Assembly: GCA_002269645.1 (NCBI GenBank)
Contig: NIVC01000424.1
Span: 310,001-374,000, forward strand
Source: Macrostomum lignano
Lineage: Eukaryota
Reading direction: 5' to 3'
DNA: 64,000 nucleotides
Shown here: positions 9,801 through 62,711 of the stretch, in pieces
Position numbering within the stretch: position 1 is the stretch's first letter
How the letters are laid out: each line of letters begins with the position of its first letter
Notes under the pieces: model-generated
Told to the model about the DNA's origin: nothing
What the model saw: the letters and a program-made list of their open reading frames with translations, nothing else
Databases searched by the model: none
Translations under genes and position numbers: made by a program

Positions 9801-9903
9801 GTTCATCTACGAGATCGCATTCCTGCTGGTGAAGCTGGTGCGCGACTCACGTGCTGGAGGCGGTGGCGCGGTCGGGACCGCCGATTCTAAGAGCTCCTGT
9901 TGA
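3863..9903 (+). CDS. DEG/ENaC-family (ASIC/FaNaC-like) ion channel, ~540 aa; exons 3863-4811, 8076-8449, 9604-9903
   Basis: TM1 followed by FQWPDVTLCNLVP (FPAVTxCN motif); Cys-rich thumb SCLESSIQAELIRQCGC...CRIDC...SPHVWP; TM2 LLSDLGGILGLYLGFS with GxS filter. Phases fit (T|GTGAGC to CGCAG|CT phase 1; CTG|GTGCGC to CCCAG|GTG phase 0); 1623 nt total, divisible by 3. Confidence 0.92.
4915..5820. repeat. 15-bp pyrimidine satellite (CCCTCTTTCCCTCTA)n interrupted by the MITE
   Basis: Direct reading. Confidence 0.92.
5247..5560. mobile_element. hAT-type MITE inserted in a 15-mer satellite in ENaC intron 1
   Basis: Perfect 15-bp TIRs CAGGGGCGTAGCCAG / CTGGCTACGCCCCTG; perfect 8-bp TSD TTTCCCTC (5239-5246 and 5561-5568); internal GGGGGGCGCCAGTTTCTT repeats. 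Confidence 0.9.
6305..7250. repeat. Purine-rich ~10-bp repeat (GAGAGCGGGA)n with higher-order units
   Basis: Direct reading. Confidence 0.9.
7785..8030. repeat. C-rich minisatellite (CCACACCCTCTGACC-like) before ENaC exon 2
   Basis: Direct reading. Confidence 0.85.
8630..9565. repeat. 15-bp minisatellite (CCCATTCCCCACACA)n, ENaC intron 2
   Basis: Direct reading. Confidence 0.93.
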
Positions 9904-12874: not shown

Positions 12875-15800
12875 ATGGACGAGAAACTCCCGGACAGCGA
12901 GCGGCACCTTAGACTGGGCCTGCTGATTCTGTACGGCCTCGTTGGCGCGGTGGCCATCGCGGCCAATGCCGGTTTGGGGCTCGCCATCTGGCTCAGCCGT
13001 CGAGACCGTCAGCGGCCGAGGACGCAGGCTCTCCTAGCCAACCTCTGCCTGTGCGACCTCTGCATCAGCGCCATCGTCCTGCCGGTCACCGCGTTGAGCT
13101 TCGCCGACCTGCGCTGGCACCTGGGCGCGGTACTCTGTCCGCTGGTCCAGTTCGCCAGCTGCTCCGTGATGTTCGCCTCGGTGTTCACCTTGGCCTCGGC
13201 CAGCCTGGTTGAAGGATTCGGGTTGGGAGACAGTTTTGCCGCAGCGGCTGCGGCAGCAGGAACCAGCGGAGGCGGCAGCGTCGGCAATAGCAGCGGAGTC
13301 GAAGGCGGGGCTGGCAGCGGCGTCAGCGTTCGAGACGGGAGTTCCAGCAGATGGCATCGGTTTTGGAGCTCACGAGGGTGCGTGCGATGGTTTGTACCTG
13401 TTAGATAGGGGTGTCCGGGTGTGTTACCTGTTAGATAGGGGTGTCCGGGTGTGTTACCTGTTAGATAGGGGTGTCCGGATGTGTTACCTGTTAGATAGGG
13501 GTGTCCGGGTGTGTTACCTGTTAGATAGAGGTGTCCGGATGTGTTACCTGTTAGATAGAGGTGTCCAGATGTGTTCCTGTTAGATAGGGGTGTCTGGGTA
13601 TGTTACCTGTTAGATAGAGGTGTCCGGTGTGTTAGCTGTTAGATAGAGGTGTCCGGTGTGTTACCTGTTAGATAGAGGTGTCCAGATGTGTTACCTGTTA
13701 GATAGGGGTGTCCGGGTGTGTTACCTGTTAGATAGAGGTCTCCGGATGTGTTACCTGTTAGATAGGGGTTTCCGGTGTGTTACCTGTTAGATAGGGGGGT
13801 CCAGGTGTGTTACCTGTTAGATAGGGGTGTCCAGGTGTGTTACCTGTTAGATAGAGGTGTCCGGGTGTTAGCTGTTAGATAGAGATGTCCGGGTGTGTTA
13901 CCTGTTAGATAGGGGTGTCTGGGTATGTTACCTGTTAGATAGAGGTGTCCGGTGTGTTAGCTGTTAGATAGGGGTGTCTGGGTATGTTACCCGTTAGATA
14001 GAGGTGTCCGGTGTGTTAGCTGTTAGATAGAGGTGTCCGGGTGTGTTACCTGTTAGATAGAGGTCTCCGGGTGTGTTACCTGTTAGATAGAGGTGTCCGG
14101 GTGTTATCTGTTAGATAGAGGTGTCCGGGTGTGTTACCTGTTAGATAGAGGTGTCCGAATGTGTTACCTTTTAGATAGGGTGTCCGGGTGTGTTACCTTT
14201 TAGATACGGGTGTCCGAGGGTGCTATATGTTAGACAGATTGTGTAACCTATGAGACAATAGTCCCTGTACAATATCTCTCTGTAAAAGCTTAGCAGAAAT
14301 CATTAACCAACGAATTCCATTCGCAGTTTTTCCGGCATAAAATGGATCGCCTGTCTGTGGCTTCTGTCCGGGCTTTTTGCCGCCCCTAATGCGGTTAATT
14401 ACCGAATCGAGTTTTGCAACGACAGGTGCGTGTTTTAAGACACTTATAAATATGCAGCAACAGGCACGGCCCAAATGGAATCCGGGGAGTGGGGTGGCTG
14501 TTTAAATGAAGCCTGGGGAGTGGGGTGGTTGTCCAACTGACGCTCGAGGAGTGGGCTGGCTGTCCAACTGATGCCCGGGGAGTGGGGTGGCTGTCCAACT
14601 GACGCTCGAGGAGTGGGCTGGCTGTCCAACTGATGCCCGGGGAGTGGGGTGGCTGTCCAACTGACGCTCGAGGAGTGGGCTGGCTGTCCAACTGATTCCC
14701 GGGGAGTGGGGTGGTTGTCCAACTGACGCTCGAGGAGTGGGCTGGCTGTCCAACTGATGCCCGGGGAGTGGGGTGGTTGTCCGACTGATGCCCGGGGAGT
14801 GGGGTGGTTGTCCAACTGATGCCCGGGGAGTGGGGTGGCTATCCAACAGACTTAAAGTGTCTCCCCCTGGTTAGTCTTATCCGCCTCAGAGCTACAATGG
14901 GCTTCTTTAGTCCTTTTTGAAATCCCTTCTTGATCAAGCAGAGTTTATTTAAAAAGGCAGAAGATGCAGAGGCAACATGACTTGGATGCTGCCTCTCGAG
15001 TTTCAAAGGTGAATTGAGAGAGGGGAGTAAATAAGGACAATGAAAATAAATCAAAGTGAATCTGAGCCAGCTTAGCCGGGAACTTAAATCAGGATTTCTT
15101 CTGTATCGACTTCGAAAATTGACAAAAAATGAATATTTTCTTAATCAAGTAGTCGGTGTCTAAATCAAGGGGATTTAGATTTAATCTTTACCTTTTCCTA
15201 TCGGATCTACTCCCTCTATCGTTTAGCCGCTCCTTCCATCACTTATCCGCTCCCTCCATCACTTATCCGCTCCCTCCATCACTTATCCGCTCCCTCCATC
15301 ACTTATCCACTCCCTCCATCACTTATCCACTCCCTCCATCACTTATCCGCTCCCTCCATCACTTATCCGCTCTCTCCATCACTTATCCACTCCCTCCATC
15401 ACTTATCCGCTCCCTCCATCACTTATCCACTCCCTCCATCACTTATCCACTCCCTCCATCACTTATCCGTTCTCTCCATCACTTATCCACTCCCTCCATC
15501 ACTTATCCACTCCCTCCATCACTTATCCGCTCCCTCCATTACTTATCCGCTCCCTCCATCACTTATCCACTCCCTCCATCACTTATCCGCTCCCTCCATC
15601 ACTTATCCGCTCTCTCCATCACTTATCCGCTCCCTCCATCACTTATCCGCTCCCTTCATCACTTATCCGCTCCCTCCATCACTTATCCGCTCTCTCCATC
15701 ACTTATCCGCTCCCTCCATCACTTATCCGCTCTCTCCATCACTTATCCGCTCTCTCCATCACTTATCCGCTCCCTCCATCACTTATCCGCTCTCTCCATC

Positions 15801-18190
15801 ACTTATCCGCTCCCTCCATCACTTATCCGCTCCCTTCATCACTTATTCGCTCTCTCCATCACTTATCCGCTTAACCTGAAGCCCCAGTCACTGCAACTCC
15901 CGCTTAAACTGAAGCCTCAGTCACTGCAACTCCCGCTTAAACTGAAGCCTCAGTCACTGCAACTCGAGCTTTACCTGAAGCCCCAGTCACTGCAACTCCC
16001 GCTTAACCTGAAGCCCCAGTCACTGCAACTCCCGCTTAACCTGAAGCCCCAGTCACTGCAACTCCCGCTTAACCTGAAGCCCCAGTCACTGCAACTCCCG
16101 CTTAACCTGAAGCTCCAGTCACTGCAACTCGAGCTTAACCTGAAGCTCCAGTCACTGCAGCTCCCGCTTAACCTGAAGCTCCAGTCACTGCAACTCCCGC
16201 TTAACCTGAAGCTCCAGTCACTGCAACTCCCGCTTAACCTGAAGCCCCAGTCACTGCAACTCGAGCTTAACCTGAAGCTCCAGTCACTGCAACTCCCGCT
16301 TAAACTGAAGCCTCAGTCACTGCAACTCGAGCTTTACCTGAAGCCCCAGTCACTGCAACTCCCGCTTAACCTGAAGCCCCAGTCACTGCAACTCCCGCTT
16401 AACCTGAAGCCCCAGTCACTGCAACTCCCGCTTAACCTGAAGCCCCAGTCACTGCAACTCCCGCTTAACCTGAAGCCCCAGTCACTGCAACTCCCGCTTA
16501 ACCTGAAGCCCCAGTCACTGCAACTCCCGCTTAACCTGAAGCTCCAGTCACTGCAACTCCCGCTTAACCTGAAGCTCCAGTCACTGCAACTCCCGCTTAA
16601 CCTGAAGCCCCAGTCACTGCAACTCGAGCTTAACCTGAAGCTCCAGTCACTGCAACTCCCGCTTAACCTGAAGCTCCAGTCACTGCAACTCCCGCTTAAC
16701 CTGAAGCTCCAGTCACTGCAACTCGAGCTTAACCTGAAGCTCCAGTCACTGCAACTCCCGCTTAACCTGAAGCTCCAGTCACTGCAACTCGAGCTTAACC
16801 TAAAGCTCCAGTCACTGCAGCTCCCGCTTAACCTGAAGCCCCAGTCACTGCAGCTCCCGCTTAACCTGAAGCTCCAGTCACTGCAGCTCCCGCTTAACCT
16901 GAAGCTCCAGTCACTGCAACTCCCGCTTAACCTGAAGCTCCAGTCACTGCAACTCCCGCTTAACCTGAAGCTCCAGTCACTGCAACTCCCGCTTAACCTG
17001 AAGCTCCAGTCACTGCAGCTCCCGCTTAACCTGAAGCCCCAGTCACTGCAACTCCCGCTTAACCTGAAGCCCCAGTCACTGCAACTCCCGCTTAACCTGA
17101 AGCCCCAGTCACTGCAGCTCCCGCTTAACCTGAAGCCTCAGTCACTGCAGCTCCCGCTTAACCTGAAGCTCCAGTCACTGCAACTCCCGCTTAACCTGAA
17201 GCCCCAGTCACTGCAACTCCCGCTTAACCTGAAGCTCCAGTCACTGCAACTCCCGCTTAACCTGAAGCCCCAGTCACTGCAGCTCCCGCTTAACCTGAAG
17301 CCCCAGTCACTGCAACTCCCGCTTAACCTGAAGTCCCAGTCACTGCAACTCCCGCTTAACCTGAAGCCCCAGTCACTGCAACTCCCGCTTAACCTGAAGC
17401 CTCAGTGACCGCAAATCCCGTCTCTTCCCTTCTCTTCTCTCCTCTGTCCAGCAACCCGCACGCCACCTACGAGCTGACGCCCGCTGAAGACTCGCAGAGC
17501 TGCCAGCTGTGCTCCGAGAGCTGGAGCCGCAGTCTCCGCCTGCTCGGCCTGCAGGCCAACCGCAGCAACGAAGACGCCGCTCGAAGCGGCTACGCCTCCC
17601 TAACTGCCGTCTGCCTGCTGCTGCTGCCCACACTGGCCATCGGCGCCGCTCACTGCCGGATCTACCAGCGCCTGTCGGGTCTGGTGCACCGACGCCAGAC
17701 CGAACTGCGGCTTCAACTGCTTCGCGGCGACCCCACGGCCGACACGGCTGCTGCAGCGGAATCGGCGGTCGATTTCCGGATGCGACGGGCTCGATGCATC
17801 TACCGCGCGTCAGTTGTCATGGTGCTGGTGTTCGTCCTGTTCTGGGCGCCGCTGCACCTGTACAACCTGTTCGCCGACACCCTGATGAACCAGCTGATCA
17901 AGCTGAACACCAGCCTGGAGTTCTTTATCGTTGCTAAGAATGTCTACCAGGTGTTCATGTGTCTGGCACTCACTAATTCGGCCGCTAATCCATTCTTTCT
18001 ATTTGCCATGCATTCCGTCTATCGGAGGTCGCTAGTTCGAATCTGCTGCCGCTGTCTACGTAATGGAAGAGACGCGGCTGTTGATAGCAATTGCGAGGAA
18101 GTCATCCACAATGACACCGCGGATGCGGATGCAGAGCTGCTGCCGCTGCGTCCGATTGAGACTGGGTCGGCCGGGAGGGGATCCGAGTAA
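12875..18190 (+). CDS. Class A (rhodopsin-like) neuropeptide-receptor-type GPCR, ~446 aa; exons 12875-13377, 14327-14425, 17452-18190
   Basis: Seven hydrophobic segments: TM2 LANLCLCDL, ECL1 WHLGAVLC, TM4 WIACLWLLSGLFAAP (99-nt phase-2 exon not in the ORF track), TM6 FVLFWAPLH, TM7 TNSAANPFF. All junctions are phase 2; 1341 nt total. Confidence 0.88.
13396..14215. repeat. ~30-bp minisatellite (GTGTTACCTGTTAGATAGGGGTGTCCGGGT)n, GPCR intron 1
   Basis: Direct reading. Confidence 0.93.
14485..14845. repeat. 31-bp minisatellite (GGGGAGTGGGGTGGCTGTCCAACTGATGCCC)n
   Basis: Direct reading; two alternating variants. Confidence 0.9.
15230..17405. repeat. Abutting 20-bp (ACTTATCCGCTCCCTCCATC)n and 33-bp (TTAACCTGAAGCCCCAGTCACTGCAACTCCCGC)n arrays, GPCR intron 2
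   Basis: Direct reading; the switch is at about 15870. Confidence 0.95.
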
Positions 18191-26026: not shown

Positions 26027-29000
26027 ATGGAGCTCAGGGTTTCCAGTTCGGACATTCTGCGTCAACCTCGAGCCGTTTCGATTCAACAAGACTCGCAGCA
26101 GCAGCAGCAGCAGGACCAAGCAGAATCCAAGCACGAGTTGCCGCCAATAATCCTACGCCGATACACCCCCAGCCAGGACATCCAGCCCGAAGAGACTGCG
26201 CCCTTCGGCATCACCGAATTCGAAACAACCGCCAAAGTGAGCGGAGTCAACACGAGGAACTTCAGAACCTTCCACGTGTACAGAGACAAGCCGCCATGGA
26301 TTGAACGGCTCACGGAAACAAGTTGCCCATTCTTGAAAGTTAATAGCAGCCTCGACGATGTGATTCCGTTGAAGAATGAGCTAGATCGCAATCCGGATCT
26401 AATTGGAATATCTTTGCGGGTAAGTACTTTCCATCGATATTCGTCCTTTTTTTACCCACCCAGATCAGCGGCCCACACAGAGGGGGCAGGCGGGCCGACA
26501 CCAAATGCGAATAATGCTCCTCAAAAACTATACGAAATTGGTAACCAAGCACTATGAATGAGAGCCTACCAAGAGACAGGGGCGCCCACCAAGAGACAGG
26601 GGCGCCCACCAAGAGACAGGGGCGCCCATCAAGAGACAGGGGCGCCCATCAAGAGACAGGGGCGCCCATCAAGAGACAGGGGCGCCCACCAAGAGACAGG
26701 GGCGCCCACCAAGAGACAGGGGCGCCCATCAAGAGACAGGGGCGCCCATCAAGAGACAGGGGCGCCCATCAAGAGACAGGGGCGCCCACCAAGAGACAGG
26801 GGCGCCCACCAAGAGACAGGGGCGCCCATCAAGAGACAGGGGCGCCCATCAAGAGACAGGGGCGCCCATCAAGAGACAGGGGCGCCCACCAAGAGACGGG
26901 CGCCCACCAAGAGACAGGGGCGCCCATCAAGAGACAGGGGCGCCCATCAAGAGACAGGGGCGCCCATCAAGAGACAGGGGCGCCCACCAAGAGACAGGGG
27001 CGCCCACCAAGAGACAGGGGCGCCCACCAAGAGACAGGGGCGCCCACCAAGAGACAGGGGCGCCCACCAAGAGACAGGGGCGCCCACAAAGAGACAGGGG
27101 CGCCCACAAAGAGACAGGGGCGCCAACTAAGAGACAGGGGCGTCAACCAAGAGACAGGGGCGCCAACCAAAAGACAGGGGCGCCCACCAAGAGACAGGGG
27201 CGCCCATCAAGAGACAGGGGCGCCCATCAAGAGACAGGGGCGCCCATCAAGAGACAGGGGCGCCCACCAAGAGACAGGGGCGCCCACCAAGAGACAGGGG
27301 CGCCCACCAAGAGACAGGGGCGCCCACCAAGAGACAGGGGCGCCCACCAAGAGACAGGGGCGCCCACAAAGAGACAGGGGCGCCCACAAAGAGACAGGGG
27401 CGCCAACTAAGAGACAGGGGCGTCAACCAAGAGACAGGGGCGCCCACCAAGAGACAGGGGCGCCCACAAAGAGACAGGGGCGCCCACCAAGAGACAGGGG
27501 CGCCCACAAAGAGACAGGGGCGTCAACCAAGAGACAGGGGCGCCAACCAAAAGACAGGGGCGCCCAACAAGAGACAGGGGCGCCCACCAAGAGACAGGGG
27601 CGCCCACCAAGAGACAGGGGCCCCGACCAAGAGACAGGGGCGCCCACCAAGAGACAGGGGCGCCAACTATGAGACAGAGGCGCCAAATAAGAGACAGGGG
27701 CGCCCACCAAGAGACAGGGGCGCCAACTATGAGACAGAGGCGCCAAATAAGAGACAGGGGCGCCCACCAAGAGACAATGGCGTCTACTAAGAAATCAAAT
27801 AGCAGCGCCCCATGGGGTGGCGGTCCGCTCTAGTTAAAGATCCTGCGTACGCCACTGACCAAAATACTCGTAATCAACATTTTCTAAAATTTTATTCCGA
27901 TATACAATGCATATTGCGACTTGCGGGAGACAAATATTTAGAATTTTGGATGAGAGGATTTTCATCAGAATAATTACAATCAAAAATCAGACAGACAACT
28001 AATAAGAGATGCTGGCAGATGCACCTGATTAAGGGGTTATAGCGACGCAAAGATTGAAAGGTATCGCTGGGTCTGTCTGAAGGGCCGGACGCCATTAGAA
28101 AAGGAAAAATGAAAGAGGTACTGGGCGCATATTTTGCTGCAGTGCGAGTTTCTAAATAGAGGCAGGGGCTGTGTGCATCCTGGTGCACTATAAGTCGCAC
28201 AAGAGGCGAGAGGTGAGAGGCATTGCTGCCCATTCCGCAGACTCCCCTGAGCAGGCACACAAGCGCGCGGATACGTACGCAGTCAAACGCACAGGCACAC
28301 ACTCACACAGGAGTGTACAGCAGCCCTAACTTTATTTATAGTTAGGCATGAACACTTCACTGTGCCTTGGGGGTTGGCCCTTGAAGGCGTTAATTGCACG
28401 AGCAGAGCTAAGCCGAGATTCCAATTTAGCCTCAAATTAATGTGACTGCACTTGGAATCGAGCCTGGGCCGCTGGCACATCAAAGCGCCGCGCTAAAACC
28501 ACTGGGCTACGGCCCACCGCTACGATAGAGGCATATTTTGTCAATTGAAGTTCAAATCCTATGATGATGAGTAGTTATACATGAATAACATGAATATGCC
28601 TTATTGAATTGTTTTTCTTAAACTCAACAAGGAAGTTGACCCGCACTACATGGGTCGCAACACTTTCGTAACGGTGTCAGACGAGCGGGAGCTCTATCGA
28701 TTCACCTCGCATCGCAGTCTGGGCGTTTTCTCTCCTGACAGTGAGCTGAGACAGGCCGCCATCAGCATAGTGACCAGCCTCCACTTCCAAGCTTTCATAG
28801 TCAGCGTTATCATTCTCGACTTTCTAGCTTTGGTCTTCGCATACAGCGACGATCCGATCATCGATATTGGAACAGATTTATTTTTTGCCGTGTACTGCTC
28901 CGAACTGATCATCAAGATAATCGCCTACGGATTTATGTTCGATGAGCACTCGTTTCTGCGGAGCGGGCACAGTGTAATAGAAGTAATCGTGATCAGCTCC

Positions 29001-31534
29001 AATGTGCTGCCGATGTTTATACCGATTACTTCAATGTTCAGGTAGGTTTTTCAACGGTTTTGGTTACAGTTGTAGCTCATATTTGTAGCCTAGTTGTTAG
29101 AACGGCGGACTCACGACTGAAAGGTCGGGGGTTCGATTCTCAACTCACTCGGAACAATTTGTGTCCTTGAGCAAGACGCTTAATTCTGCATTGCTTCAGT
29201 TCACCCAGTTGTAAAATGGCCAGCATTCTGGGGTAATTGAGGGTGTGTGTGGCGACCCACAGTCTTTGGACTGAACAGCCGTACGCAGCCTTCAGATGCT
29301 CCGCGCAATAGCTGCGGCTGAGCTGTCGGTTGCACATATGGCCGTTAGGGTAGGTAAAATCAATAATAATAATTTATTTAATTCGTTCATATTACACTAT
29401 ATCTTCAGGAATTTATATCTACAAGCCTTTATATGGCGCTGTGAAGAAGCATCGAAAAAAATATTAAAATGCATACGCGAGATCTATATTTCAAGGATAT
29501 GCGAGTTAATCGGCTTTATGTGCAGATTTTTCAGCATTGGGGTCTTTGAAAGGAACCTGTGCAATTAGTTTCTAATTTGTGGCATTCTAATTTATTTTCT
29601 AGGGCTAAATTTTGGAACGGGTGTCTTTTGGATGATTAAACGGAGATTTAGAGACCTAAAAGAAGATACATGTACTAATACACACCGGATATTAAACCGC
29701 TGGAAAAAACTTATTTTTTCAAACCAAAACGCGCAGGCAACTTCGAGTCATCCGGGTGATCCGCCTGTTCCGTCTCATTGGCACGCTTCAGTTCACGCGC
29801 AAAATCATGAGAGCTGTGGTGAGCTCCATCAAGGATCTGGTGCCAGTTTTCGGGCTTTTTATGGCTCTGGTTGGATTCTTCAGCCTGTGCTCGTTGGTGT
29901 TCTACCGGCGTTCTCTGTTGGGCAAATGCGTCAACATTAACTACACTGCGATATTTGACGGTGCAGGCGACGCTGCCAGCTACGACAGCGTAGCTGCGGC
30001 CTCCAGGGTCATGCACAATCGTTTTCTCAACTGGACAGACAACACGGACAATTGGCAGCCAGGACCGTTCGGAGCCCAGCGCTGCCCAGTGATCACATCT
30101 AGTCCAAACTGGTGGACCAGCATTATTGACGATCGCCAGATGCGCAAGTGCCCGGAGCCTTACCGGTGCATGCAGACTACCACGGGCAACCCGGACATGG
30201 GCTTCAGCAATTACGACACGCTGATGCTATCAATGTTGAGCACTTTCCGCTTACTGTGCCAGGACTGGTGGGACAACCTGTTCGTTCAGTTGTCTTTAGT
30301 TAACGGTGGGCACGCAACAACGCTGTACTTCTTGGCCCTGATATTTCTAGGCTCGCACTATGTGATCAACTTAGTATTGTCTACTATTACGCTCTCATAT
30401 CAGAGAAACGAACGATCGGAAGACACTGACGAGGATGAGCTGGCTAGGATGGCCGTGCTAATGCACGTTAATAGAGACAATTACCTTCGCAGACAAGTGG
30501 AAATCTATAATGTACTGCTAGACCAACAGCGCAGTGGACTGACTGAACCAAAGTTTCTTCGAGAACTGAACGAATCTCCCGTGGGCAGGTCGCCTTTGGT
30601 GGAAGCCTACATAGACGAGTATATAAAATCCTATTCCATGCAGCCGGGGCCCAACAGTCAGATAGGCCGCAAGACCAATGTGTACCTTAACGCTCTGAAC
30701 ATGGCGACCTCGCCAGGCAAAATAGGCGTTCGTCTGCGCGGCATGGTGGTTCGAAACGGCAGCACGGATGATTTGCCAATCGATCGGTTAATCAACTTCG
30801 TCATTTTGATGAATGTTGTCGAGATGCTAGTGGTAACTCCGGTTAATATACAATCGCAACAAATTATCGAAGGCACGAACAAGCTTTATACAATAATATT
30901 CACCCTGGAAGCTATAATTAAGATTCGCTATCAGCGTACTTATTATTTGAAGAATGACATAAACCGATTTGACCTAATAATTGTATTCTTCTGTTTAATT
31001 GAGATGATGCTACCAACTAGCGGTAGCCGAATGGCAATGGTACTTCGGATGACGCGTTTTCTCCGGTTATTCAAACTGGCTCGCGTGTCCAAGGAGCTTG
31101 AGAGGCTGCTAACCATAATGTTCCAGTCGTTCAGGTCCGAGATACCCCTGATTGTTGTCAGCTTTGTAGTCATCCTGATAAGCGCTGGCATCGGCATGGT
31201 CATGTTTCAGGATGTTTACAAAAAGAATCCGCAATATTTAAGACCGACACAGAATTTCGCCGATTTATACAACAGCATTCTGCTAGTTTTTCGTATTATG
31301 TGCGGCGAATGGACAGAAAACCTGTGGGTCTGCATGAAAATTATGGAAACAGCTCCAGACAAAGGATTCTGCGTCGCTTATTTTCTCACTAATCAGATAA
31401 TAGTCAGTCTCATCATATTTCAACTCTACATTGGTATTCTGCTGAGCAAGTTCTCAGAATTTCGATCATTGTCCGCGAGCAGCAGGAGAGGGCGAGGGCG
31501 GAAGCGGAGGATGCGGGCCAAGAGAAACCACTAA
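26027..31534 (+). CDS. Nav1: Nav1-type voltage-gated sodium channel, 5' half (N-terminus, DI, DII); exons 26027-26419, 28632-29041, 29737-31534
   Basis: N-terminal DLIGISLR|EVDPHYMGRNTFVTV...YRF matches the Nav cytoplasmic N-terminus; S4s RQLRVIRVIRLFR and LRMTRFLRLFKLAR; pore loops FRLLCQDWWDNL (D) and FRIMCGEWTENLW (E). The frame ends at TAA 31532-31534 just after DII S6. Confidence 0.9.
26466..27857. mobile_element. Possible old hAT-type MITE containing a 21-bp minisatellite (CCAAGAGACAGGGGCGCCCAC)n at 26570-27775, Nav intron 1
   Basis: Ends CAGCGGCCCACACAG and rc CAGTGGCGTACGCAG (11/15 match); flanks ACCCAGAT vs ACCAAAAT (6/8). The array is certain; the element boundaries are tentative. 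Confidence 0.45.
28330..28515 (-). mobile_element. tRNA-derived SINE family B copy in Nav intron 1
   Basis: GGGCCGTAGCCCAGTGG...GGCTCGATTCC head; tail GGGCCAACCCCCAAGGCACAG...CATGCC is shared with 39310-39490. Confidence 0.6.
29080..29320 (+). mobile_element. tRNA-derived SINE family A (CORE-like central domain), near full length, in Nav intron 2
   Basis: A-box-like TAGCCTAGTTG and B-box GGTTCGATTC, followed by GTGTCCTTGAGCAAGACGCTTAA...CAGTTCACCCAGTTGTAAAATGG; homologous to the copies at 407-540 and 1487-1643. Confidence 0.75.
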
Positions 31535-31545
31535 AGCCCCTACTT

Positions 31546-33792
31546 ATGGAAAGGATTAAGGGCTTTTTAGCAAAAACTTTCGGCATTAATTTTGGCGTTG
31601 TAAGGGAGTCAGCGACGATGGGTGCTACAGATACGGCGTTCTCGCGTTTCCGAAACGCGCTGGCCGCAATAGCGAGCTACAGTTCCAGCTGGTACTCCAG
31701 GTACATAATAGCCATGACTATATTGAGTTCGGCAGCTCTAATACTCGACGATTACTATTTAAAAAGCGATCCGGGGCTTCAGAAAATATGCCAACACCTA
31801 GAAATAATTTTTTTGGTCGTGTTTGGCACGGAGGTGATCGTCAAGACTATCGCCTACGGGCCGCGCACTTATTGCAGTAGTCCGTGGCGCATAATCGATG
31901 CTATCATTGTTCTTGTCTCGCTGGTTGACGTCGTTATTAACAACATCTACACCAAGGAAGTGAACCTAGCCATGCTCAGGGTGATTAGAACTCTACGATG
32001 CCTGCGAATACTGCGCACAGCGAACGTGTGGGAGGGCTTCAAGCTCACAATCAGCGCACTATTCCGTTCGGTTGGCAGACTATTTTTTGCATTCCTCATT
32101 GTGATCATCGTCTGGCTGATGTTTGCTCTGGTGTCAACCAGCCTTTTCTCGAACAAGTTTTACAGATGCGTACACGACGGTGTAGTGTTAAATAAGACAA
32201 TAATACCAAACAAGGCGGCCTGTCTTAAAGCCAATTACAGTTGGGTCAATAAGCGAATCAACTTTGACACAACGCCGCACGCGATGCTCGCTTTACTTGA
32301 GGTGTCCGTATTTAAAGGCTGGATTGACATCCTGCAGGACATCTCCAACTCGCCTAGTGCAATCGATGATCAGCCAGAAATCAACAATAACACAACGCTC
32401 AGCGTATTGATCTACATATTATTTATTATCATCGGCTCGTTCTTCATGATCGGCATGCTCATTGGTGTGATTGTTGACAGTTTCGAACAGGAGAGGATAA
32501 AAGTAGCCAAAATAGTGCTAACTGACGGTCAGAGACGACTGCAGAACACTCTGAAGCAGTACCTCATGTTTCCACTCAGTTCAGCCAAGCCGGTGACAGA
32601 GGGTTGGCTGTCAGAACGCTTACACGGAATCATCAATACAATCTATGTGGAAGTATTCTATCTGGTGCTAATCTTAGTCAGCACTGTCATCATGGCTCTG
32701 CAATATCATCCCGGCAAAAGCAGATTGGTGCAAGTGTACTTAACTGTATTTGATGACATCATTCTATTCTGTTTTGTACTGGAGATTATAATGAAGATTC
32801 TTGGCGAAGGGTCTTACTATCTTGTGCCTCTAGTCAGCTGGAATCTGATCGACTTCCTTATCGTAGTACCGTCAGTGGTTGCGGAAGTCTGCGAAGAAGC
32901 CATCGAACTTCAATACCTTCGCGTGGTTCGTTTCGCCCGTGTCTTCCGCATGGGCCGCCTGTTGGCTCGATCAACGAACATAAAAACTGTGCGCGACATT
33001 CTGCTCGCCATGGTGGCCACCCTTCCTAGCATGTTGAACATGATCGCCCTGCTAATCATGGCAATTTGCATCTTTGCCATCGTTGGCGTCAATCTATTCA
33101 ACGACCAGGAAGGCAACATAGCGCACCCGTTCAACGAGTTGTTCAACTTTCGCAGCTTCACAGCTACCTGGAGAATTCTGTTCATAGTAAGCACGGCGGC
33201 TGGCTTCAATGACTACCTGGAAGGTACAATGCGATTCCCATATCCGTATTCTGTACTAGCTGTTGTTTTCTGGGTGTCCTACCTGTGCGTAGCCTTCTTT
33301 GTACTAACCAATCTGATAGTATCGGCTGTCGTATCCAGCTATAACGAGGTGTTTAACAATGAGGACTTCAAGACGCAGTTACAAACGGCGGAAAAATTCA
33401 CCAACCTGTGGAACGATTTCGATCAGAATGGTACAGGCAAAATGCATTCGAAGCACATAAACGAGCTGTTGGATTTACTAACCGAACCGTTGCGAATGGC
33501 CCAGCCGAATTCGGGTGTGATTAGCTACATGGAAATACCGCTCACCGACGACTATCACGTGTGCTACGGCGACGTCATCACAGCTTTAGTGAAGGAGATT
33601 ATGGAAGAAATGGGCCTGCTGGACAGCGAAACGGACGACATCAACCAGGAGATTAAACACACGGCATCCAAACCGCCATTAAATACGCAGGTGATGTACA
33701 AGTTGCGCATGGCAACTGACGTGATTAAGACTGCTTGGAGACAGAAGAAGTTGCGACAAAGTTTGGCCAAATTCAGTGAACTTCAGGACTAG
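31546..33792 (+). CDS. Nav1: Nav1-type sodium channel, 3' half (DIII, DIV, EF-hand-like C-terminal domain, IQ-like helix); one frame off the 5' half
   Basis: Pore loops LLEVSVFKGWIDIL (K) and FIVSTAAGFNDYL (A); S4s LRVIRTLRCLRILR and LRVVRFARVFRMGR; C-terminal FTNLWNDFDQNGTG...EPLRMAQPN. This frame is already open from 31393. Confidence 0.9.
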   Translation: MERIKGFLAKTFGINFGVVRESATMGATDTAFSRFRNALAAIASYSSSWYSRYIIAMTILSSAALILDDYYLKSDPGLQKICQHLEIIFLVVFGTEVIVKTIAYGPRTYCSSPWRIIDAIIVLVSLVDVVINNIYTKEVNLAMLRVIRTLRCLRILRTANVWEGFKLTISALFRSVGRLFFAFLIVIIVWLMFALVSTSLFSNKFYRCVHDGVVLNKTIIPNKAACLKANYSWVNKRINFDTTPHAMLALLEVSVFKGWIDILQDISNSPSAIDDQPEINNNTTLSVLIYILFIIIGSFFMIGMLIGVIVDSFEQERIKVAKIVLTDGQRRLQNTLKQYLMFPLSSAKPVTEGWLSERLHGIINTIYVEVFYLVLILVSTVIMALQYHPGKSRLVQVYLTVFDDIILFCFVLEIIMKILGEGSYYLVPLVSWNLIDFLIVVPSVVAEVCEEAIELQYLRVVRFARVFRMGRLLARSTNIKTVRDILLAMVATLPSMLNMIALLIMAICIFAIVGVNLFNDQEGNIAHPFNELFNFRSFTATWRILFIVSTAAGFNDYLEGTMRFPYPYSVLAVVFWVSYLCVAFFVLTNLIVSAVVSSYNEVFNNEDFKTQLQTAEKFTNLWNDFDQNGTGKMHSKHINELLDLLTEPLRMAQPNSGVISYMEIPLTDDYHVCYGDVITALVKEIMEEMGLLDSETDDINQEIKHTASKPPLNTQVMYKLRMATDVIKTAWRQKKLRQSLAKFSELQD

Positions 33793-34623
33793 TAGGACAT
33801 GCATATATCTGCAAGTTTAGATAGACAAAAAACAAGTAATACTGCTTGCGATTCACCGAGTATCTCCCTCAATCAAATAGTCCAATCACAAACCCATAAA
33901 ACTTCAATTCCCATCAGTCACTATAAAAAAGCAAATCACCCTTTATCAGTAGCTTAACCCTTCCTTATAAAAGCACAAACTTTTTCAGCACAAATACATT
34001 GCACTCGGAAGATTTAATTACACTGATTAAAAAAACAGACAGCAAAAGCAGTTTACTGTAGTCAGCAATTTTTTATTCGAATTGAAACTGTTAGAACACT
34101 ATAATCAAAAGTTTGCATACTAAACAAACGACTTGTTTTTTGTCCTTTTTTCACCGTTTTATTTGTTCTTATAATGCTTCATTCGGTGCTTAGATAACTT
34201 GAGCTTGTCACTACCGATAGCAAGATAAAAATATTAGAAAAATAGCTTCAATAATTAACCGCGAATCAGGCACTCGTACAACAAAGAAAAACTATTTCCA
34301 AATACAATGAAATTAACTAAGACGAATCATTCGATAAAGATAAATGGCAGACACAATAACAATCTCATAGAAGACACAAATAACAATCTCATAGAAGACA
34401 CAAATTGTGCACGTACAGAGTCTATTTTTTCAAAACTTAGACAATACAAAACTGTTGACAAAACCACACTGACACACAGAAACTAGAAATACACAGAAAT
34501 GAAAGAAGTTTGCTACTTGAAATGAATATGATGCACTCTCCTTGGTCTTTTGGTTGACTCTAAATTAACAATTTGAAACTTTGTACTTTGTACTTGCTTT
34601 AGTCAAGCAAAAGATCGCACAAG

Positions 34624-35082
34624 TCACAATCGACAATGCCGAGCGAGATGAACCAGATAAACCACACTAGCTGCAATTCCGCCCATATTCAACGCCATGC
34701 TAAGCCCGTGCAGACGACGGAAAGCTGTTTTATCCTTGCGCTTCAGAGCCTGACTGACCAGCGGGCCAAGGTACAGCTGGTGCAGCCAGGCGCTAGCGGT
34801 GCTGGCGCACAATACAGCCATGATTCCCAGATTGTTCTGAGCTAGGCGAGTCAAACTGAAGTGCTGCTGTGCGCTGCCTCGCAGCTGAATGTAGCTGCCC
34901 AGTAAGGCGGTGGACAGAATACTCTGAGACAAGAAGTAGCAAGGAAAAATGATAGATTGAACCTCTTGGAAAGTCTCAGATGACAGGGCCCTGAACAGAC
35001 TGGGTCCATGGACAAAGGTAACCCATAGCTGGGTGCCAAATTGGGCACCCCAGACTGACAGGTTTACTAGAGTGGATATCAT
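34624..35082 (-). CDS. TMEM205: TMEM205 (DUF4149) membrane protein, 152 aa, single coding exon
   Basis: WGAQFGTQLWVTFVHGPSLFRAL...FQEVQSIIFPCYF and FRRLHGLSMALN match the recognisable TMEM205 motifs. Confidence 0.88.
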   Translation of the reverse strand: MISTLVNLSVWGAQFGTQLWVTFVHGPSLFRALSSETFQEVQSIIFPCYFLSQSILSTALLGSYIQLRGSAQQHFSLTRLAQNNLGIMAVLCASTASAWLHQLYLGPLVSQALKRKDKTAFRRLHGLSMALNMGGIAASVVYLVHLARHCRL

Positions 35083-38003
35083 TTTAAATTGAAGCTGGTT
35101 TCTTTTCTCTAAAATAGCAAGTTTTTTGCGAGAATGATTTGGCCTGATGAATGTTCATACAAGATTTAAAACTACATATTTAGCCACTTGATGTTATTTG
35201 AGATCTGACATAAAAACATGTTAACAATGAACACACCAATAAAATAGGATTATTGCCAAAGTGAACAATTTCCTTGTTGCTAATAGCCCCACAATCCCTT
35301 TCAATTGTCTATAACTGTTAGTCATCAATAACAATTTGTAAGCCCTCTTTAGAAGTTTAAAAAAATCACTTGGTCAAATTATTCTATGGCATCATATTTG
35401 GAAAGGAAAAGCCAAAAAAATTGTTATTTGATATTATCAAAAAAACTTATAAATAAATTTAAAGGCATAGAATGGTACTCCCAGGTATTTTGATATGAAT
35501 GTTCTAGCCCTAGGCCCAATAAATGTTCCAAAAGCTAAAAAACTTCAAGTAAAGATTTTTGAAAGTTTTACCTCAACTAACATTTTGAATTGTTTAACTA
35601 AAACACATAAGTGTATGACTTCTTAATTAAGCTAAAAATATAATATATAGGAAAAAGAAAACATATATACACATATATATAGGCTAATATTCTAGAACTT
35701 TAATTATTAAGGATTATAAATTGATATATTTTGTCTATTGTCAATGAATATAGGATAAAAAGCAAGACCTTTCCCTTGCTATTTCTATAGTTACATTAGA
35801 AATTGATGGTGGATATGACCAAAAAAGGATATTGACTTAGGCCTAGTCTTAAAATGGGTGCAAATATATTAGAGTGGCACTTTAGCTATTAGATTCTTTT
35901 TATTGGGATAGCAATGAATGTATAAAATTATAAAAAAACCCTATCTCTCTTGTTTCATTAGTATTTGACCCTAGTGGGGGCAGTGATACAATATCTTACA
36001 AAGGTCAAGGTGCAACTAGACATTGTTGAAAGGGTATTCTAGAGGACAAAGATTCAAAGGAGGGGAGAGAGGGTGGCACTATGGCTTTGTATTTTGGCAA
36101 AAAATGCATGGTTTCCTTTCTAATTTTTGAAGAATCAAAATTCCTCAAAGGTTAGGCCTATGTGCCTAGGGGCCTAGGGGTCTATATTTTATCTTCAAAA
36201 GCTAGAAGTTGAATTGCCAATTGTAATTGTTATGTGATGGTGATTCTAACATAACATAAATATATAGCCTTTAGTTTATACTTTTTACTTGGTATTGGTA
36301 ATTAATTATCCACTATACTAAATTTTTTTGGCTATGTGACTAATAGGCAAGTGAAAGTTAATAATAGGCATAGCTAATAGTGTATAGTGGTAGATAGACC
36401 TTAGATCTTAGTCTTAATCTTAGGTCTAGCTAGGCCTAGTAAATTATATAGAAATTAGCCTAGTTAGACATAGACTCATATAGAGCCTAGAACAAAGAAA
36501 CATGTTAATGCTTCATTTTATACTATAGACCAAATGGATGAGTCTGTCTAATTTAAAAAGGCAGTCATGTCTCATGTGCATCTAAAAGCGATTTTTCAGT
36601 CCCAGTGGTGACATAAAATTCCATAAATAAGAGGGATAGAGTAGACTCCGCGATGACAATAGGGTTATATCTCACAGCAAGGACTACTCAACTAGAGACT
36701 CAACTCAACTAGAGAGTCTAGTTGAGTAGTCCGACCTTGTCTCACAGATGGTCGTCGTCGAAAACTTCGATTTTTGCTATATAATTTTATTACTATACCC
36801 ATATATACTAGTGTGATAGGTATTAACTTTTTTAAATACATTCTCCCCCCTAACATGGGATAGGCCTATCCCCAGTAAAAATCATGTAGCCTACGCCAAC
36901 CAACAGGCCAGTCTTATAAAATTAGCCTAGATGCACTATGGCAAAGAGATGCATTATGGTTCCCAGAAAATTATTAAAGTGAATCGGTGCCATAAAAACT
37001 ACGTTCATATGAATCAGGTGAAGTAGATGATTTTATATAAGGATCAGAATGTCTTGTTAGGATTTTTTCAATGACAATAGGTCAGGTTTTACAGGAAGAA
37101 ACTAATAAGTTACTAAGATTGTTATGAAATGGTGGATACTAAATAGATCTGAGCGCGTATATTAGAGTTGAGGATCGTGTTAAATTCCCCTTGCACGTAC
37201 CCAAGCATGCGCATGAGCATTTTCTGAATAAAAAGTAAACTAAAACTGATGCTTTCTGGAAATCGCGTAGGCTTAACTAGCGGTACTTGGTTATAAATTT
37301 TACGGAACGCCTTTTGTTGCAAAAATTATGCGTACGATGATCCATGGCAGCAGGTTACGGTGTACATGTACTTCTTTATATAGTTGTTCGTGTCAGTAAC
37401 TATAGCTACCTATCCAATGCGTCTCAAAGCTAAATATACTGATAAATTGTGAGTATTTGATTTTATTCTTGTAGCCCATCACGCCATTATCTGGTATTGT
37501 CGGCAAACGTTTGCGGAATTCGGAATGTTGAACACTGAACAGGCTGCAAAACATTTTAACGCTGCATTCGACTGCCAATATTCTACCTGTCTCCAAGATT
37601 GAAGACACCCGCGGGTGGAACTAAATGTAAATAAATAACAAGCAGTATAAGGTAATTTTGCTTTGCCCACACCCGCATCCTGCATGTCGCGAAGCTCTTA
37701 AAATTAGAGGAGAGATGAAATCCTAAATTATACATGTATGTATAGGACGTATCGTTGAGTACCTATAATATACGCGCATGCGGTGTTTAATTTCAAAGCT
37801 AGCTAGTTATCATCACAACAAGTAATTACAGCAGCTACAGTACATTGGCGCGCTTGTACATGTGTGCTCAGAAGTCAGCGGAATGGGCAGAATTGACGCG
37901 AGTTAATAAATATCGTAAAATTGTCAACAAAAATGCCAAAATTGAAGGCTTAGTTTCCCTAGTGCGTTTTTTAATCATGTATTTATTGATCAATCGCAAT
38001 GAT

Positions 38004-47390: not shown

Positions 47391-50300
47391 CTAGGAAAGA
47401 CCAAAAAACGCCTGACAAGCCCGATCTGGCAGCAGGGTGGTCACCAAAATTGGCTGGAATTTGTCAACTAGAGCAACAATCTGAGTCCGATGACGGCCCA
47501 GATGATGGGCCAGGTGCTCAATGTGACAGCTGCGCGAGCTGTCCAACTCCAGAAGATCAACAGCGTCGGCTAGAAGCTCCAGATCGGCCGGTTCAGACGA
47601 CTGAGGCAGTCGTTGAATTGTCAGCTGAACTGGCGGGCTGAGGCGGTCGCGCAGACGGGCTGGCAGCTGCGGCAGTCTGCGGTTGGTGGCGGGCACGAGA
47701 TGAGTGATTATTTTAATTATGTAGTTGCTATGGGCTGTACAAGGAAGTAACTATGGTAAATAAACAAAGGTCGTTCTTGTTCTGTACGAGAGGAGCGCTT
47801 GATATAAGCAAATACTGGTTGCTATGGTCGGCAGGAGTGGTTGCTATGGTCAGGAGTGGTTGCTATGGGCATTAGGAGTGGTTGCAATGGTCGGCAGGAG
47901 TGGTTGCTATGGGCGGTAGGAGTGGTTGCTATGGTCGGTAAGAGTAGTTGCTACGGCGGTATGACCGGGACTATAGACAGTGAAAAATAGTTGCCATGGC
48001 AACCAATGAACAGTGAAATATGGTTGCTATGGTGATCAATGAACAGTGAAATGTGGTTGCTATGGTGACACAATGAACAGTGAAATATGGTTCTATGGTG
48101 ACCAATGAACAGTGAAATATGGTTGCTATGGCAACCAATGAGCAGTGAAATATGGTTGCTATGGTGACCTATGAACAGTGAAATATGGTTGCTATGGCAA
48201 CCAATGAACAGTGAAATATGGTTGCTATGGCAACCAATGAGCAGTTACATATGGTTGCTACAAGAGATGATGCACTCAATCAACTAATTAAATTCAATAC
48301 AAAGTACTTACGGATTCGGCGACAAGCCATCGTCGATGCAGCCGAACGTGGCGTCGGCCACATCGACAGGATCCGGCAGAAAGGTGACGTATGTGTGCAG
48401 CTGAAGCAGCAGACGACGGCGGAGCAGCCAGGTGAGCAGTCCGAGTGGCAGGTCGGCGGCCTGCTCACGATCCCGCAAGTCGCCAAGAGGCGCGTGAAGG
48501 GAGAAAGCGGCCAGGACCTGGGGGGGGGGTAAAGATGGCGATATAACTGATGTGAATGGCGATATAACTGATGTGGATGGCGATATAACTGATGTGAATG
48601 GCGATCTAACTTATGTGAATGGCGATATAACTGATGTGAATGGCGATCTAACTTATGTGAATGGCGATCTAACTGATGTGAATGGCGATCTAAATTATGT
48701 GAATGGAGATTTAAATGATGTGAATGGCTGTCTAAATTACGTGAATGGCAATCTAAATAATGTGAACAGTGATCTAACTGATGTGAATAGCGATTTAAAT
48801 TACGTGAACGGTGATCTAAATGATGTGAATGGCGATCTAAATGATGTGAATGAAGATTAAAATATTGTGAACGACGATCTAACTAATGTGAATGGAGGTT
48901 TGGATACTGTGGATGGCGTTGTGAATGAAGAATATGAGAGATTATAGTGTTAGCAATAAACAAAATTAGTAAAATAATAACAATATTAATTAATTTTACC
49001 TCAGCCAGACTGGGCATGGACTGCGAATGACTGGAGCATTGGTTCTGATAGTCTGCCACAAGATCTGGACTCTCTTCTAGAAGTACATCTAATCTAGGGT
49101 TGAGCACGTACACGTTGGCGTCAGTTACGGGATGACAGATAATAGCACTACCCCAGCGCACCAGGTGCCTGGCGAACTCCAAAGCGACAGAGTAGGCCAT
49201 ATCAGTTTCCAGGCGAATATCTAATAAACTTTTCTGCGGCGACAAAGCGCGCAGGAAACGGGACATGAGCGGATTGCAATCCATTGGCAGGTGTGAGTAG
49301 GTTAAACCGCCATTTGCACCGGCTTCCAAAGGGTTGCTGCTGCTGCTGCTGTAGTCAGTCAGTGGCAGGACGCAGTGGTAAGGCTGCAGAGACATTAGAC
49401 AGGACTCCACTAGGCTTGGAAGAACATAGCATCTGCCTAAAATTATTTATTTTGGCGGATTTAACTACTCGTACTTAAAGTAGAAGTTTTTGCTACATTT
49501 TTTCAGAGGCAAAATTTCAGAACTGTCAAACCTTCTGAGTTTTGCTTTACAGACAAAATCTGAGACCACAAATACACTTCCGAGTGTTGCTTTAGAGACA
49601 AAATCTGAGACCACAAAGACACCTCTGCGTACTGCTTTAGAGACAAATTAGAGACAAAATCTGAGACCACAAAGACACCTCTGCGTACTGCTTTAGAGAC
49701 AAAATCTGAGACCACAGTGACACTTCCGAGTGTTGCTTTAGAGACAAAATCTGAGACCACAGTGACACTTCCGAGTGTTGCTTTAGAGACAAAATCTGAG
49801 ACCACAGTGACACTTCCGAGTGTTGCTTTAGAGACAAAATCTGAGACCACAGTGACACTTCCGAGTGTTGCTTTAGAGACAAAATCTGAGACCACAGTGA
49901 CACTTCCGAGTGTTGCTTTAGAGACAAAATCTGAGACCACAGTGACACTTTCGAGTGTTGCTTTAGAGACAAAATCTGAGACCACAGTGACACTTTCGAG
50001 TGTTGCTTTAGAGACAAAATCTGAGACCACAGTGACACTTTCGAGTGTTGCTTTAGAGACAAAATCTGAGACCACAGTGACACTTTCGAGTGTTGCTTTA
50101 GAGACAAAATCTGAGACCACAGTGACACTTTCGAGTGTTGCTTTAGAGACAAAATCTGAGACCACAGTGACACTTTCGAGTGTTGCTTTAGAGACAAAAT
50201 CTGAGACCACAGTGACACTTTCGAGTGTTGCTTTAGAGACAACAGCTGAGATCACAAATACAAGTCTTCTTTCGTAAACAATCGTAACTGAAAATAATTG

Positions 50301-62591: not shown

Positions 62592-62630
<39 letters not shown>

Positions 62631-62711
62631 TTAACTAACTAACTAATTAACTAACTAACTAATTAACTAACTAACTAAATAACTAACTAACTAATTAACT
62701 AACTAACTAAT

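What the first reader, a model, noticed from the sequence alone, without database searches (positions are those of the whole stretch)
31393..31560. Nav1-type channel split between DII and DIII: -1 frameshift, two half-channels, or assembly indel
The DI-DII frame stops at 31534 with an out-of-frame-looking tail (SSRRGRGRKRRMRAKRNH). The DIII-DIV frame is open from 31393 and reads as a plausible linker (IVREQQERARAEAEDAGQEKPLKPLLMER), with an ATG at 31546 only 11 nt after the stop. I found no GT-AG pair that restores the frame and no in-frame X XXY YYZ slippery heptamer. Both halves keep intact pore and S4 motifs and have no other lesions. One extra base would give about 1619 aa. The options are a 1-nt assembly error (most parsimonious), recent pseudogenisation of a duplicate, recoding, or a channel assembled from two 12-TM halves; engineered split Nav channels cut in cytoplasmic linkers are known to function.
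Basis: partly seen in the sequence, partly recalled or inferred. Interest (0 to 1): 0.72.

Follow-up and report, generated by a model that had tools for sequence, protein, structure and literature searches.

The report
One-base gap splits flatworm sodium channel
The apparent split of this flatworm sodium-channel gene comes from one missing C in a CCC run that two other copies in the same genome assembly keep, so it is most likely a sequencing-assembly error or, less likely, a very recent knock-out of a redundant copy.

Summary
In detail: the DI-DII frame stops at 31532-31534, and the DIII-DIV frame is open from 31393 with an ATG at 31546. The window is Macrostomum lignano assembly Mlig_3_7, contig NIVC01000424.1:310001-374000. 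The gene is already annotated there as BOX15_Mlig006313g1, an 866-aa truncated product. The same assembly holds two homeologous copies, Mlig005290g1 (1599 aa) and g2 (1619 aa), which read straight through as ...SEFRSLSREQQERARAE.... The only indel in the 4.06-kb exon 3 is CC (window 31473-31474) against CCC in both other copies. A distant Macrostomum-like relative is also continuous there. From 31350 to 33826 the window matches g2 exactly apart from this base. Of 41 substitutions among the three copies, 38 are synonymous. There is no credible intron, slippery heptamer, stimulatory RNA structure or trans-splice acceptor. Mlig_3_7 is a PacBio CLR/Canu assembly polished only with short reads, in a triplicated genome where 93% of read pairs multimap. 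Best explanation: an uncorrected homopolymer deletion (about 0.7). Rival: a real, very recent 1-bp deletion in one redundant homeolog (about 0.25). A functional two-half channel or recoding has no support. I could not reach reads, so the choice between the first two is still open. Interest is low.

The parts
26027..26419 (+). Exon 1 of the channel gene (N-terminus, 131 codons; donor CGG|GTAAGT).
   Evidence: Matches the N-terminus of P0251 and P0252. Boundary determined.
26420..28631 (+). Intron 1. It contains a 20-bp minisatellite (26564-27776, about 61 copies) that produces spurious long ORFs.
28632..29041 (+). Exon 2 (end of the N-terminal cytoplasmic part and DI S1-S3).
   Evidence: Pfam Ion_trans partial hit. 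100% identical to L003 and L005. Boundaries.
29042..29736 (+). Intron 2 (GTAGGT...CGCAG). It is absent from the distant relative L001 and about 5 kb long in homeolog L005.
29737..33792 (+). Exon 3: DI S4 through DIV and the C-terminus. It is a single continuous coding exon in both homeologs. Here it is broken only by the 1-nt gap at 31473-31474.
31473..31474 (+). The lesion: CC here, CCC in both homeologous copies (TGTCCGCG against TGTCCCGCG). It is the only indel in exon 3 among the three copies.
   Evidence: Alignment to the distant relative places the shift at the same spot.
31475..31534 (+). Out-of-frame tail (ASSRRGRGRKRRMRAKRNH) and premature TAA at 31532-31534. This is the end of the annotated 866-aa product BOX15_Mlig006313g1.
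31546..33792 (+). DIII-DIV ORF (748 aa from ATG 31546; frame open from 31393). It is not annotated as a gene in the assembly. It is identical at the nucleotide level to homeolog L005.

Best explanation
The window is Macrostomum lignano Mlig_3_7, contig NIVC01000424.1:310001-374000. It carries one of three homeologous copies (subgenomes S, L1, L2) of a compact DEKA-type Nav1-like channel gene with three exons. In this copy a CCC run in the DII-DIII linker is assembled as CC (31473-31474). That shifts the frame, produces a 20-codon junk tail and a stop, and leaves DIII-DIV as an unannotated downstream ORF.

The most likely cause is a residual single-base homopolymer deletion in the PacBio CLR/Canu consensus that short-read polishing could not repair. 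My inference for why: reads carrying CCC align without a gap to the near-identical homeolog instead of to this contig. On this reading the real gene encodes one 1619-aa four-domain channel, like its two homeologs.

Shown here: the identity of the locus, the exact position and nature of the lesion, the intact state in the two homeologs and in a distant relative, and the absence of any signal for an intron, recoding or trans-splicing. Inferred: that the missing base is an assembly error and not a true allele.
For: - Locus identity: L004 from GCA_002269645.1 is base-for-base identical to window 16027-41534, and P0251 equals the truncated product.
- Two other loci in the same assembly encode intact 1599-aa and 1619-aa proteins that read SEFRSLSREQQERARAE across the site.
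- There is exactly one indel in 4.06 kb of exon 3 among the three copies, CC against CCC.
- Between 31350 and 33826 it is the only difference from L005.
- All three window-specific 1-nt indels in a 6.5-kb three-way alignment are deletions in homopolymer runs. Window-specific small indels overall are 6 deletions to 1 insertion.
- 38 of 41 substitutions among the copies are synonymous, and 6 of the 7 on the window branch are.
- The distant relative P0002/L001 is also continuous, and its alignment needs a 1-nt gap in the window at the same place.
- Assembly method: PacBio CLR data, Canu 1.4, Pilon polishing only, with Bowtie2 and STAR mappings (PMC5730564).
- Genome context: about 70% of the assembly is in 3-copy blocks, 93% of read pairs multimap, and 36% of the assembly length is in chimeric scaffolds (PMC10733133).
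Against: - No reads could be examined, so the error is inferred and not seen.
- A CCC run is short for a homopolymer error.
- The window copy also carries real-looking private differences from its homeologs: 7 substitutions and a 3-nt A-run expansion at about 33827-33832. It is therefore a distinct locus in which a genuine 1-bp deletion could have arisen.
- With three subgenomes, loss of one copy would probably be tolerated.
- Only one frameshift appears in about 14.6 kb of CDS across the three copies, so residual errors are not obviously frequent here.
Confidence: 0.7

Rival explanations
1. The 1-bp deletion is real and very recent. It sits in one of the three homeologs, probably one of the two MLI1 (L1/L2) chromosome variants. 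This would be an early step of gene loss after whole-genome duplication. The truncated DI-DII product would be non-functional, and the other copies would supply the channel.
For: - The window copy is a distinct locus with private substitutions and a differently sized intron 2 compared with L005.
- The genome is a neopolyploid with three subgenomes, so redundancy exists.
- There is a single lesion and no other decay, which is what a very young null allele looks like.
Against: - The downstream half has zero differences from the intact homeolog over 2.3 kb. Nothing shows relaxed constraint, and the event would have to be extremely recent.
- The lesion has the typical form of a PacBio consensus error, a deletion in a homopolymer, in an assembly polished only with multimapping short reads.
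Confidence: 0.25
2. The deletion is real and the locus now makes two 12-TM half-channels, DI-DII and DIII-DIV. These would co-assemble into a working or modulatory channel, with the second half translated from ATG 31546 by reinitiation or after SL trans-splicing.
For: - An ATG lies 11 nt after the stop, and the downstream ORF is fully intact.
- M. lignano does have SL trans-splicing and operons, and its SL ends in ATG.
- From general knowledge: Nav and Cav channels cut in cytoplasmic linkers can function when the parts are co-expressed.
Against: - No [T/C]TNCAG trans-splice acceptor exists between 31359 and 31624.
- The assembly's annotation, which the paper describes as using trans-splice and poly(A) evidence, calls no gene for DIII-DIV.
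- The intactness of the downstream ORF is fully explained by its 100% identity to the intact homeolog, so it is not evidence of selection on a split form.
- Both homeologs and a distant relative are single-chain.
- Reinitiation after an 866-codon ORF is not expected in eukaryotes (general knowledge).
Confidence: 0.02
3. Programmed -1 ribosomal frameshifting, or a short unannotated intron, restores a single polypeptide from this sequence.
For: The required shift is -1, and the two frames overlap by about 140 nt.
Against: - There is no X XXY YYZ heptamer in the overlap.
- The 100 nt downstream fold worse than shuffled controls, z = +2.14.
- Only two GT donors are available, GTTCTC and GTCCGC. 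Neither matches the species' GT[G/A]AG motif, and the candidate acceptors lack CAG with a pyrimidine tract.
- The window has no extra sequence relative to the uninterrupted homeologs. It is one base shorter.
- The homeologs need no recoding.
Confidence: 0.01

Closest known systems
BOX15_Mlig006313g1 (PAA83285.1), Macrostomum lignano Mlig_3_7, contig NIVC01000424.1
   Same: This is the same locus. The 866-aa annotated product is exactly the exon 1 + exon 2 + exon 3 translation of the window up to the premature stop.
   Different: Nothing differs. The public annotation simply stops at 31534 and leaves DIII-DIV unannotated.
BOX15_Mlig005290g2 (PAA79862.1, 1619 aa) and g1 (PAA90619.1, 1599 aa), homeologous copies in the same assembly
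   Same: - They share the same three-exon gene.
- Exon 3 is 99.7% (g2) and 99.1% (g1) identical at the nucleotide level.
- They have the same flanking genes: a 242-aa gene upstream and a DUF4149 gene downstream.
   Different: - They have CCC where the window has CC, so they encode one continuous four-domain protein.
- g2 has a roughly 5-kb intron 2.
- The g1 annotation lacks 20 residues in exon 1.
Bilaterian Nav1 (DEKA) voltage-gated sodium channels, e.g. human Nav1.5 and Nav1.7 structures
   Same: - There are four Ion_trans repeats.
- D/E/K/A are at the four pore positions.
- The best PDB matches are Nav1 channels, ahead of Cav and NALCN.
   Different: - Identity is only about 30%.
- The protein is very compact: 1619 aa, with a DII-DIII linker of about 75 residues.
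- IVL replaces the IFM inactivation triplet.
- The gene has only two introns.
Engineered split Nav/Cav channels (halves co-expressed)
   Same: The cut would fall in the cytoplasmic DII-DIII linker, which is a tolerated place to cut (general knowledge, not tested here).
   Different: Nothing here shows that the second half is expressed. The split form is not conserved in either homeolog or in the distant relative.

Membership tests
Nav1-type four-domain voltage-gated sodium channel | Four homologous Ion_trans (6-TM) repeats | tested here: met
   Pfam Ion_trans gives two stretches in each half, plus DI S1-S3 in exon 2. There is full-length alignment to the intact homeologs.
Nav1-type four-domain voltage-gated sodium channel | D/E/K/A selectivity-filter residues in DI-DIV | tested here: met
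   - DI: QDWW aligned to Nav1.3 QDYW.
- DII: CGEW aligned to Nav1 CGEW.
- DIII: FKGW aligned to Nav1.5 FKGW.
- DIV: STAAGF, with A aligned to the DIV filter position.
Nav1-type four-domain voltage-gated sodium channel | Closer to Nav1 than to Cav or NALCN | tested here: met
   PDB phmmer for the DIII-DIV half gives Nav1.5 at 4e-107, Cav3 at 1e-80, Cav1 at 6e-65 and NALCN at 1e-21. The order is the same for the DI-DII half and for named database hits.
Nav1-type four-domain voltage-gated sodium channel | Hydrophobic inactivation triplet (IFM or MFM) in the DIII-DIV linker | tested here: inconclusive
   IVL aligns to the IFM of Nav1.5. It is a hydrophobic triplet but not the canonical motif.
Nav1-type four-domain voltage-gated sodium channel | All four domains on one polypeptide | tested here: not met
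   This is not met in the window as assembled, because of the stop at 31532-31534. It is met in both homeologs and in the distant relative.
Nav1-type four-domain voltage-gated sodium channel | Voltage-gated Na+-selective current | not testable with these tools
   This needs electrophysiology.
Programmed -1 ribosomal frameshift site | X XXY YYZ slippery heptamer in the zero frame within the overlap | tested here: not met
   No such heptamer exists in any frame between 31393 and 31534.
Programmed -1 ribosomal frameshift site | Stable downstream stimulatory structure | tested here: not met
   RNA 31476-31575 has an MFE of -17.3 kcal/mol against a shuffle mean of -23.1, z = +2.14.
Programmed -1 ribosomal frameshift site | Frameshift arrangement conserved in relatives | tested here: not met
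   Both homeologs and P0002 are in one frame.
Spliceosomal intron bridging the frames | Species-typical GT[G/A]AG donor and CAG acceptor, and extra sequence relative to uninterrupted homologs | tested here: not met
   Only the donors GTTCTC and GTCCGC are available, against the published motif. The window is 1 nt shorter than the homeologs, not longer.
SL trans-spliced bicistron (M. lignano operon) | [T/C]TNCAG trans-splice acceptor upstream of the second cistron, and a separately annotated downstream gene | tested here: not met
   The motif is absent between 31359 and 31624. No gene is called over DIII-DIV in the annotation.
Decaying pseudogene | Several lesions and relaxed constraint (excess non-synonymous change) | tested here: not met
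   There is one lesion only. The window branch has 6 synonymous and 1 non-synonymous change. There are 0 differences from the intact homeolog downstream of the lesion. This does not exclude a very young null allele.

The most novel reading that the evidence does not exclude
The CC allele is real on one MLI1 chromosome variant, and both 12-TM halves are made: DIII-DIV from ATG 31546, or from an SL-donated ATG. The halves would then assemble into a natural split Nav channel, or the DI-DII fragment would act as a dominant modulator of the intact homeologs.
Probability: 0.02. Interest if true: 0.6.

Novelty: not a real feature. Interest (0 to 1): 0.08.

Why it matters
If the gap is an assembly error, the lesson is practical. 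Mlig_3_7 annotates this copy as an 866-aa 'Ion transport domain-containing protein' under a different gene-cluster ID from its two homeologs. Copy-number and gene-family counts for flatworm ion channels taken from this assembly would therefore be distorted.

If the deletion is real, it is an ordinary example of early gene loss in a neopolyploid.

Independently of the split, M. lignano carries three near-identical copies of a very compact, divergent DEKA-type Nav1-like channel with IVL at the IFM position. This may interest people studying sodium-channel evolution in flatworms, but it is already in public databases.

Tried and rejected
- **Word-index protein searches.** The DIII-DIV half alone found only one weak hit. 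A junction-only alignment found nothing. So I could not recover short-read (Logan) fragments that would show the CC or CCC state independently.
- **Exact-product look-ups.** The look-ups for the 748-aa ORF and for P0251, P0152 and P0252 returned only the NCBI contigs and no Logan contigs. This is uninformative for both alleles.
- **Intron enumeration.** 188 formal GT/GC/AT-type pairs and 16 GT-AG pairs keep the frame open. All were rejected on signal quality and on the homeolog alignment.
- **-1 frameshifting.** Rejected.
- **SL trans-splice acceptor.** Rejected.
- **Retrogene idea.** The long intron-free exon 3 suggested a retrogene, but the gene has two canonical introns and conserved synteny in all three homeologous blocks, so I dropped the idea.
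- **dN/dS against the distant relative.** Not pursued, because about 70% nucleotide identity means synonymous sites are saturated and the test cannot date a recent event.
- **Literature on frameshift or indel error rates in Mlig_3_7.** The search found nothing quantitative.
Full report
**Observation.** The frame that encodes DI S4 to DII S6 runs from 29756 and ends ...LLSKFSEFRSLSASSRRGRGRKRRMRAKRNH, with TAA at 31532-31534. A second frame is open from 31393. It reads ...IVREQQERARAEAEDAGQEKPLKPLLMERIKGF..., has an ATG at 31546 (11 nt after the stop), and continues for 748 codons to 33792. Passing from the first frame to the second needs a -1 shift, which is the same as one missing base.

**Family.**
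- Pfam finds two Ion_trans repeats in each half.
- PDB sequence searches place both halves closest to Nav1 channels. For DIII-DIV the E-values are 4e-107 for Nav1.5, 1e-80 for Cav3, 6e-65 for Cav1 and 1e-21 for NALCN.
- The four pore residues are D (QDWW), E (CGEW), K (FKGW) and A (STAAGF).
- IVL sits where Nav1.5 has IFM.

**Gene structure.**
- DI S1-S3 lie in a separate exon. Intron 2 (29042-29736) has canonical signals, AG|GTAGGT...CGCAG|G.
- Exon 1 is 26027-26419. Intron 1 holds a 20-bp minisatellite.
- As assembled, the CDS is 393 + 410 + 1798 nt, which gives 866 aa. With one more base, exon 3 runs to 33792 and the product is 1619 aa.

**Where the shift lies, and what relatives show.**
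- An exhaustive HMMER search found P0002, a 1428-aa protein. Both window halves are 68-69% identical to it when aligned, and it is continuous across DII-DIII.
- P0002's DNA (Logan contigs L001 and L002) aligns to the window on both sides of the junction. The alignment needs a single 1-nt gap in the window at about 31475. So the window holds no extra sequence there, which rules out an intron, and the ancestral state is one reading frame.

**Identity of the locus.**
- A profile search then found three Macrostomum lignano proteins in one 90% cluster:
  - PAA90619.1, Mlig005290g1, 1599 aa.
  - PAA79862.1, Mlig005290g2, 1619 aa.
  - PAA83285.1, Mlig006313g1, 866 aa.
- The 866-aa protein is exactly the window's truncated product.
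- Its locus, GCA_002269645.1 NIVC01000424.1:326027-351534, is base-for-base identical to window 16027-41534. The window is therefore NIVC01000424.1:310001-374000 of assembly Mlig_3_7.
- The other two proteins read ...SEFRSLSREQQERARAEAEDAGQEKPLKPLLMERIKG..., that is, frame A joined to frame B.

**The lesion.**
- I aligned the three genomic loci: the window, L003 (g1) and L005 (g2). Exon 3 has 37 substitutions against g1 and 11 against g2, and exactly one indel. The window has TGT-CCGCG where both others have TGTCCCGCG, so CC at 31473-31474 stands against CCC.
- Of the 41 variable sites among the three copies, 38 are synonymous. The window's own branch has 6 synonymous changes and 1 non-synonymous change, all upstream of the indel.
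- Downstream of the indel the window is identical to g2 for the rest of the exon. Between 31350 and 33826 the missing C is the only difference.
- In a 6.5-kb three-way alignment the window has 6 private small deletions and 1 private insertion. All three private 1-nt events are deletions inside homopolymer runs.

**Context from the literature.**
- Mlig_3_7 was built from PacBio data (SRX1063031) with Canu 1.4. It was polished with Pilon using Bowtie2-mapped Illumina reads and STAR-mapped RNA-seq (PMC5730564).
- The sequenced DV1 line carries three homeologous subgenomes, S, L1 and L2 (PMC10733133). About 70% of the assembly lies in 3-copy blocks and coding divergence is about 1.1%. In that paper 93% of read pairs map to several loci, and 36% of the assembly length is in chimeric scaffolds.
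- The three channel loci, with the same neighbours (a 242-aa gene upstream and a DUF4149 gene downstream), fit this 3-copy pattern.
- My inference: a consensus deletion in one copy is hard to polish in this setting. Reads carrying the true CCC align without a gap to the near-identical homeolog, and not to the erroneous contig.

**Alternatives tested.**
- *Intron.* Only two GT dinucleotides lie between the end of DII S6 and the stop. They are caaGTTCTC (31450) and attGTCCGC (31471). Neither fits the species' GT[G/A]AG donor motif, and the candidate acceptors lack CAG and pyrimidine tracts.
- *-1 frameshifting.* There is no X XXY YYZ heptamer in the overlap. The downstream 100 nt fold worse than shuffled controls, z = +2.14. 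The homeologs do not need recoding.
- *Two half-channels.* M. lignano does use SL trans-splicing and operons, and its SL ends in ATG. However, no [T/C]TNCAG acceptor lies between 31359 and 31624. The assembly's annotation, which the paper describes as using trans-splice and poly(A) evidence, calls no gene over DIII-DIV. The intactness of the DIII-DIV ORF is not evidence of selection for a split form, because it is simply identical to the intact homeolog.
- *Old pseudogene.* Excluded, because there is a single lesion and no excess of non-synonymous change.

**Verdict.**
- What is shown: the locus, the exact lesion, and its absence from two homeologs and a distant relative.
- What remains inferred: whether the missing C is an assembly error or a true, very young deletion.
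- The error-like form of the lesion, the assembly and polishing method, and the multimapping problem favour an artefact, at about 0.7.
- A real loss-of-function allele in a redundant homeolog of a neopolyploid remains plausible, at about 0.25.
- A functional split channel (about 0.02) and recoding or an intron (about 0.01) are not supported.
- I could not reach raw reads. The last protein search, aimed at short-read fragments across the junction, returned nothing. Exact-product look-ups found only the NCBI contigs.
- A k-mer count of CC against CCC in the raw DV1 reads would settle the question.
- The finding is ordinary and already present in public annotation, so interest is low.

Noticed in passing
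window 29737-34056 compared with L005 17335-21660: Divergence from homeolog g2 is mosaic. There are 11 substitutions in the 1.7 kb of exon 3 upstream of 31350, then none for about 2.7 kb (31350-34056), then normal divergence again. This suggests recent gene conversion or recombination between homeologs, or a chimeric consensus in the assembly.
   Followed up: partly
window 1-64000: The window is extraordinarily rich in minisatellites: 72 TRF rows and dozens of arrays with 4-154-bp units, many 0.5-2 kb long. They create many spurious long ORFs, for example 26554-27672 and 15156-17408. This agrees with the published 15% simple and tandem repeat content of M. lignano.
   Followed up: partly
window 29042-29736; L005 12285-17334; L001 about 750: Intron 2 is 695 nt in the window and about 5 kb in homeolog g2. 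It is absent from the distant relative's contig L001, whose 4.3-kb ORF runs uninterrupted. L001 appears to be genomic, because an intron-like sequence with a CAG acceptor lies upstream of its exon-2 homolog. This is a case of intron gain or loss and of large indel divergence between homeologs.
   Followed up: partly
window 26050-26120 (exon 1) compared with P0152: The g1 annotation (1599 aa) has EFG where the window and g2 have the 23-residue Q-rich stretch DILRQPRAVSIQQDSQQQQQQDQ. This is either a deletion or an annotated mini-intron in g1.
   Followed up: no
window 32490-32520: The DIII-DIV linker has IVL where vertebrate Nav1 channels have the IFM fast-inactivation motif. The channel is also unusually compact, at 1619 aa with a DII-DIII linker of about 75 residues.
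   Followed up: partly
window 57987-58514, 62069-62590, 63276-63773 (minus strand): These are exons of an IGHMBP2/SMUBP2-like helicase, with AAA_11 and AAA_12 domains and a C-terminal AN1 zinc finger. A (CTAA)n microsatellite fills one of its introns (62575-63277).
   Followed up: partly
window 48886-49446 and 51752-52441 (minus strand): These are exons of an NPRL3 (Pfam NPR3) homolog, including an alanine/serine-rich low-complexity stretch.
   Followed up: no
window 9577-9900 (+) and 17393-18187 (+): The first is the C-terminal exon of an amiloride-sensitive (ASC/DEG/ENaC) channel. The second is the TM4-TM7 part of a rhodopsin-family GPCR, which lies directly after a 33-bp minisatellite array.
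   Followed up: no
window 34624-35103 (minus strand): This is a DUF4149 (TMEM205-like) single-exon gene immediately downstream of the channel. Its annotated products differ in length among the three homeologous loci (159, 155 and 158 aa).
   Followed up: no
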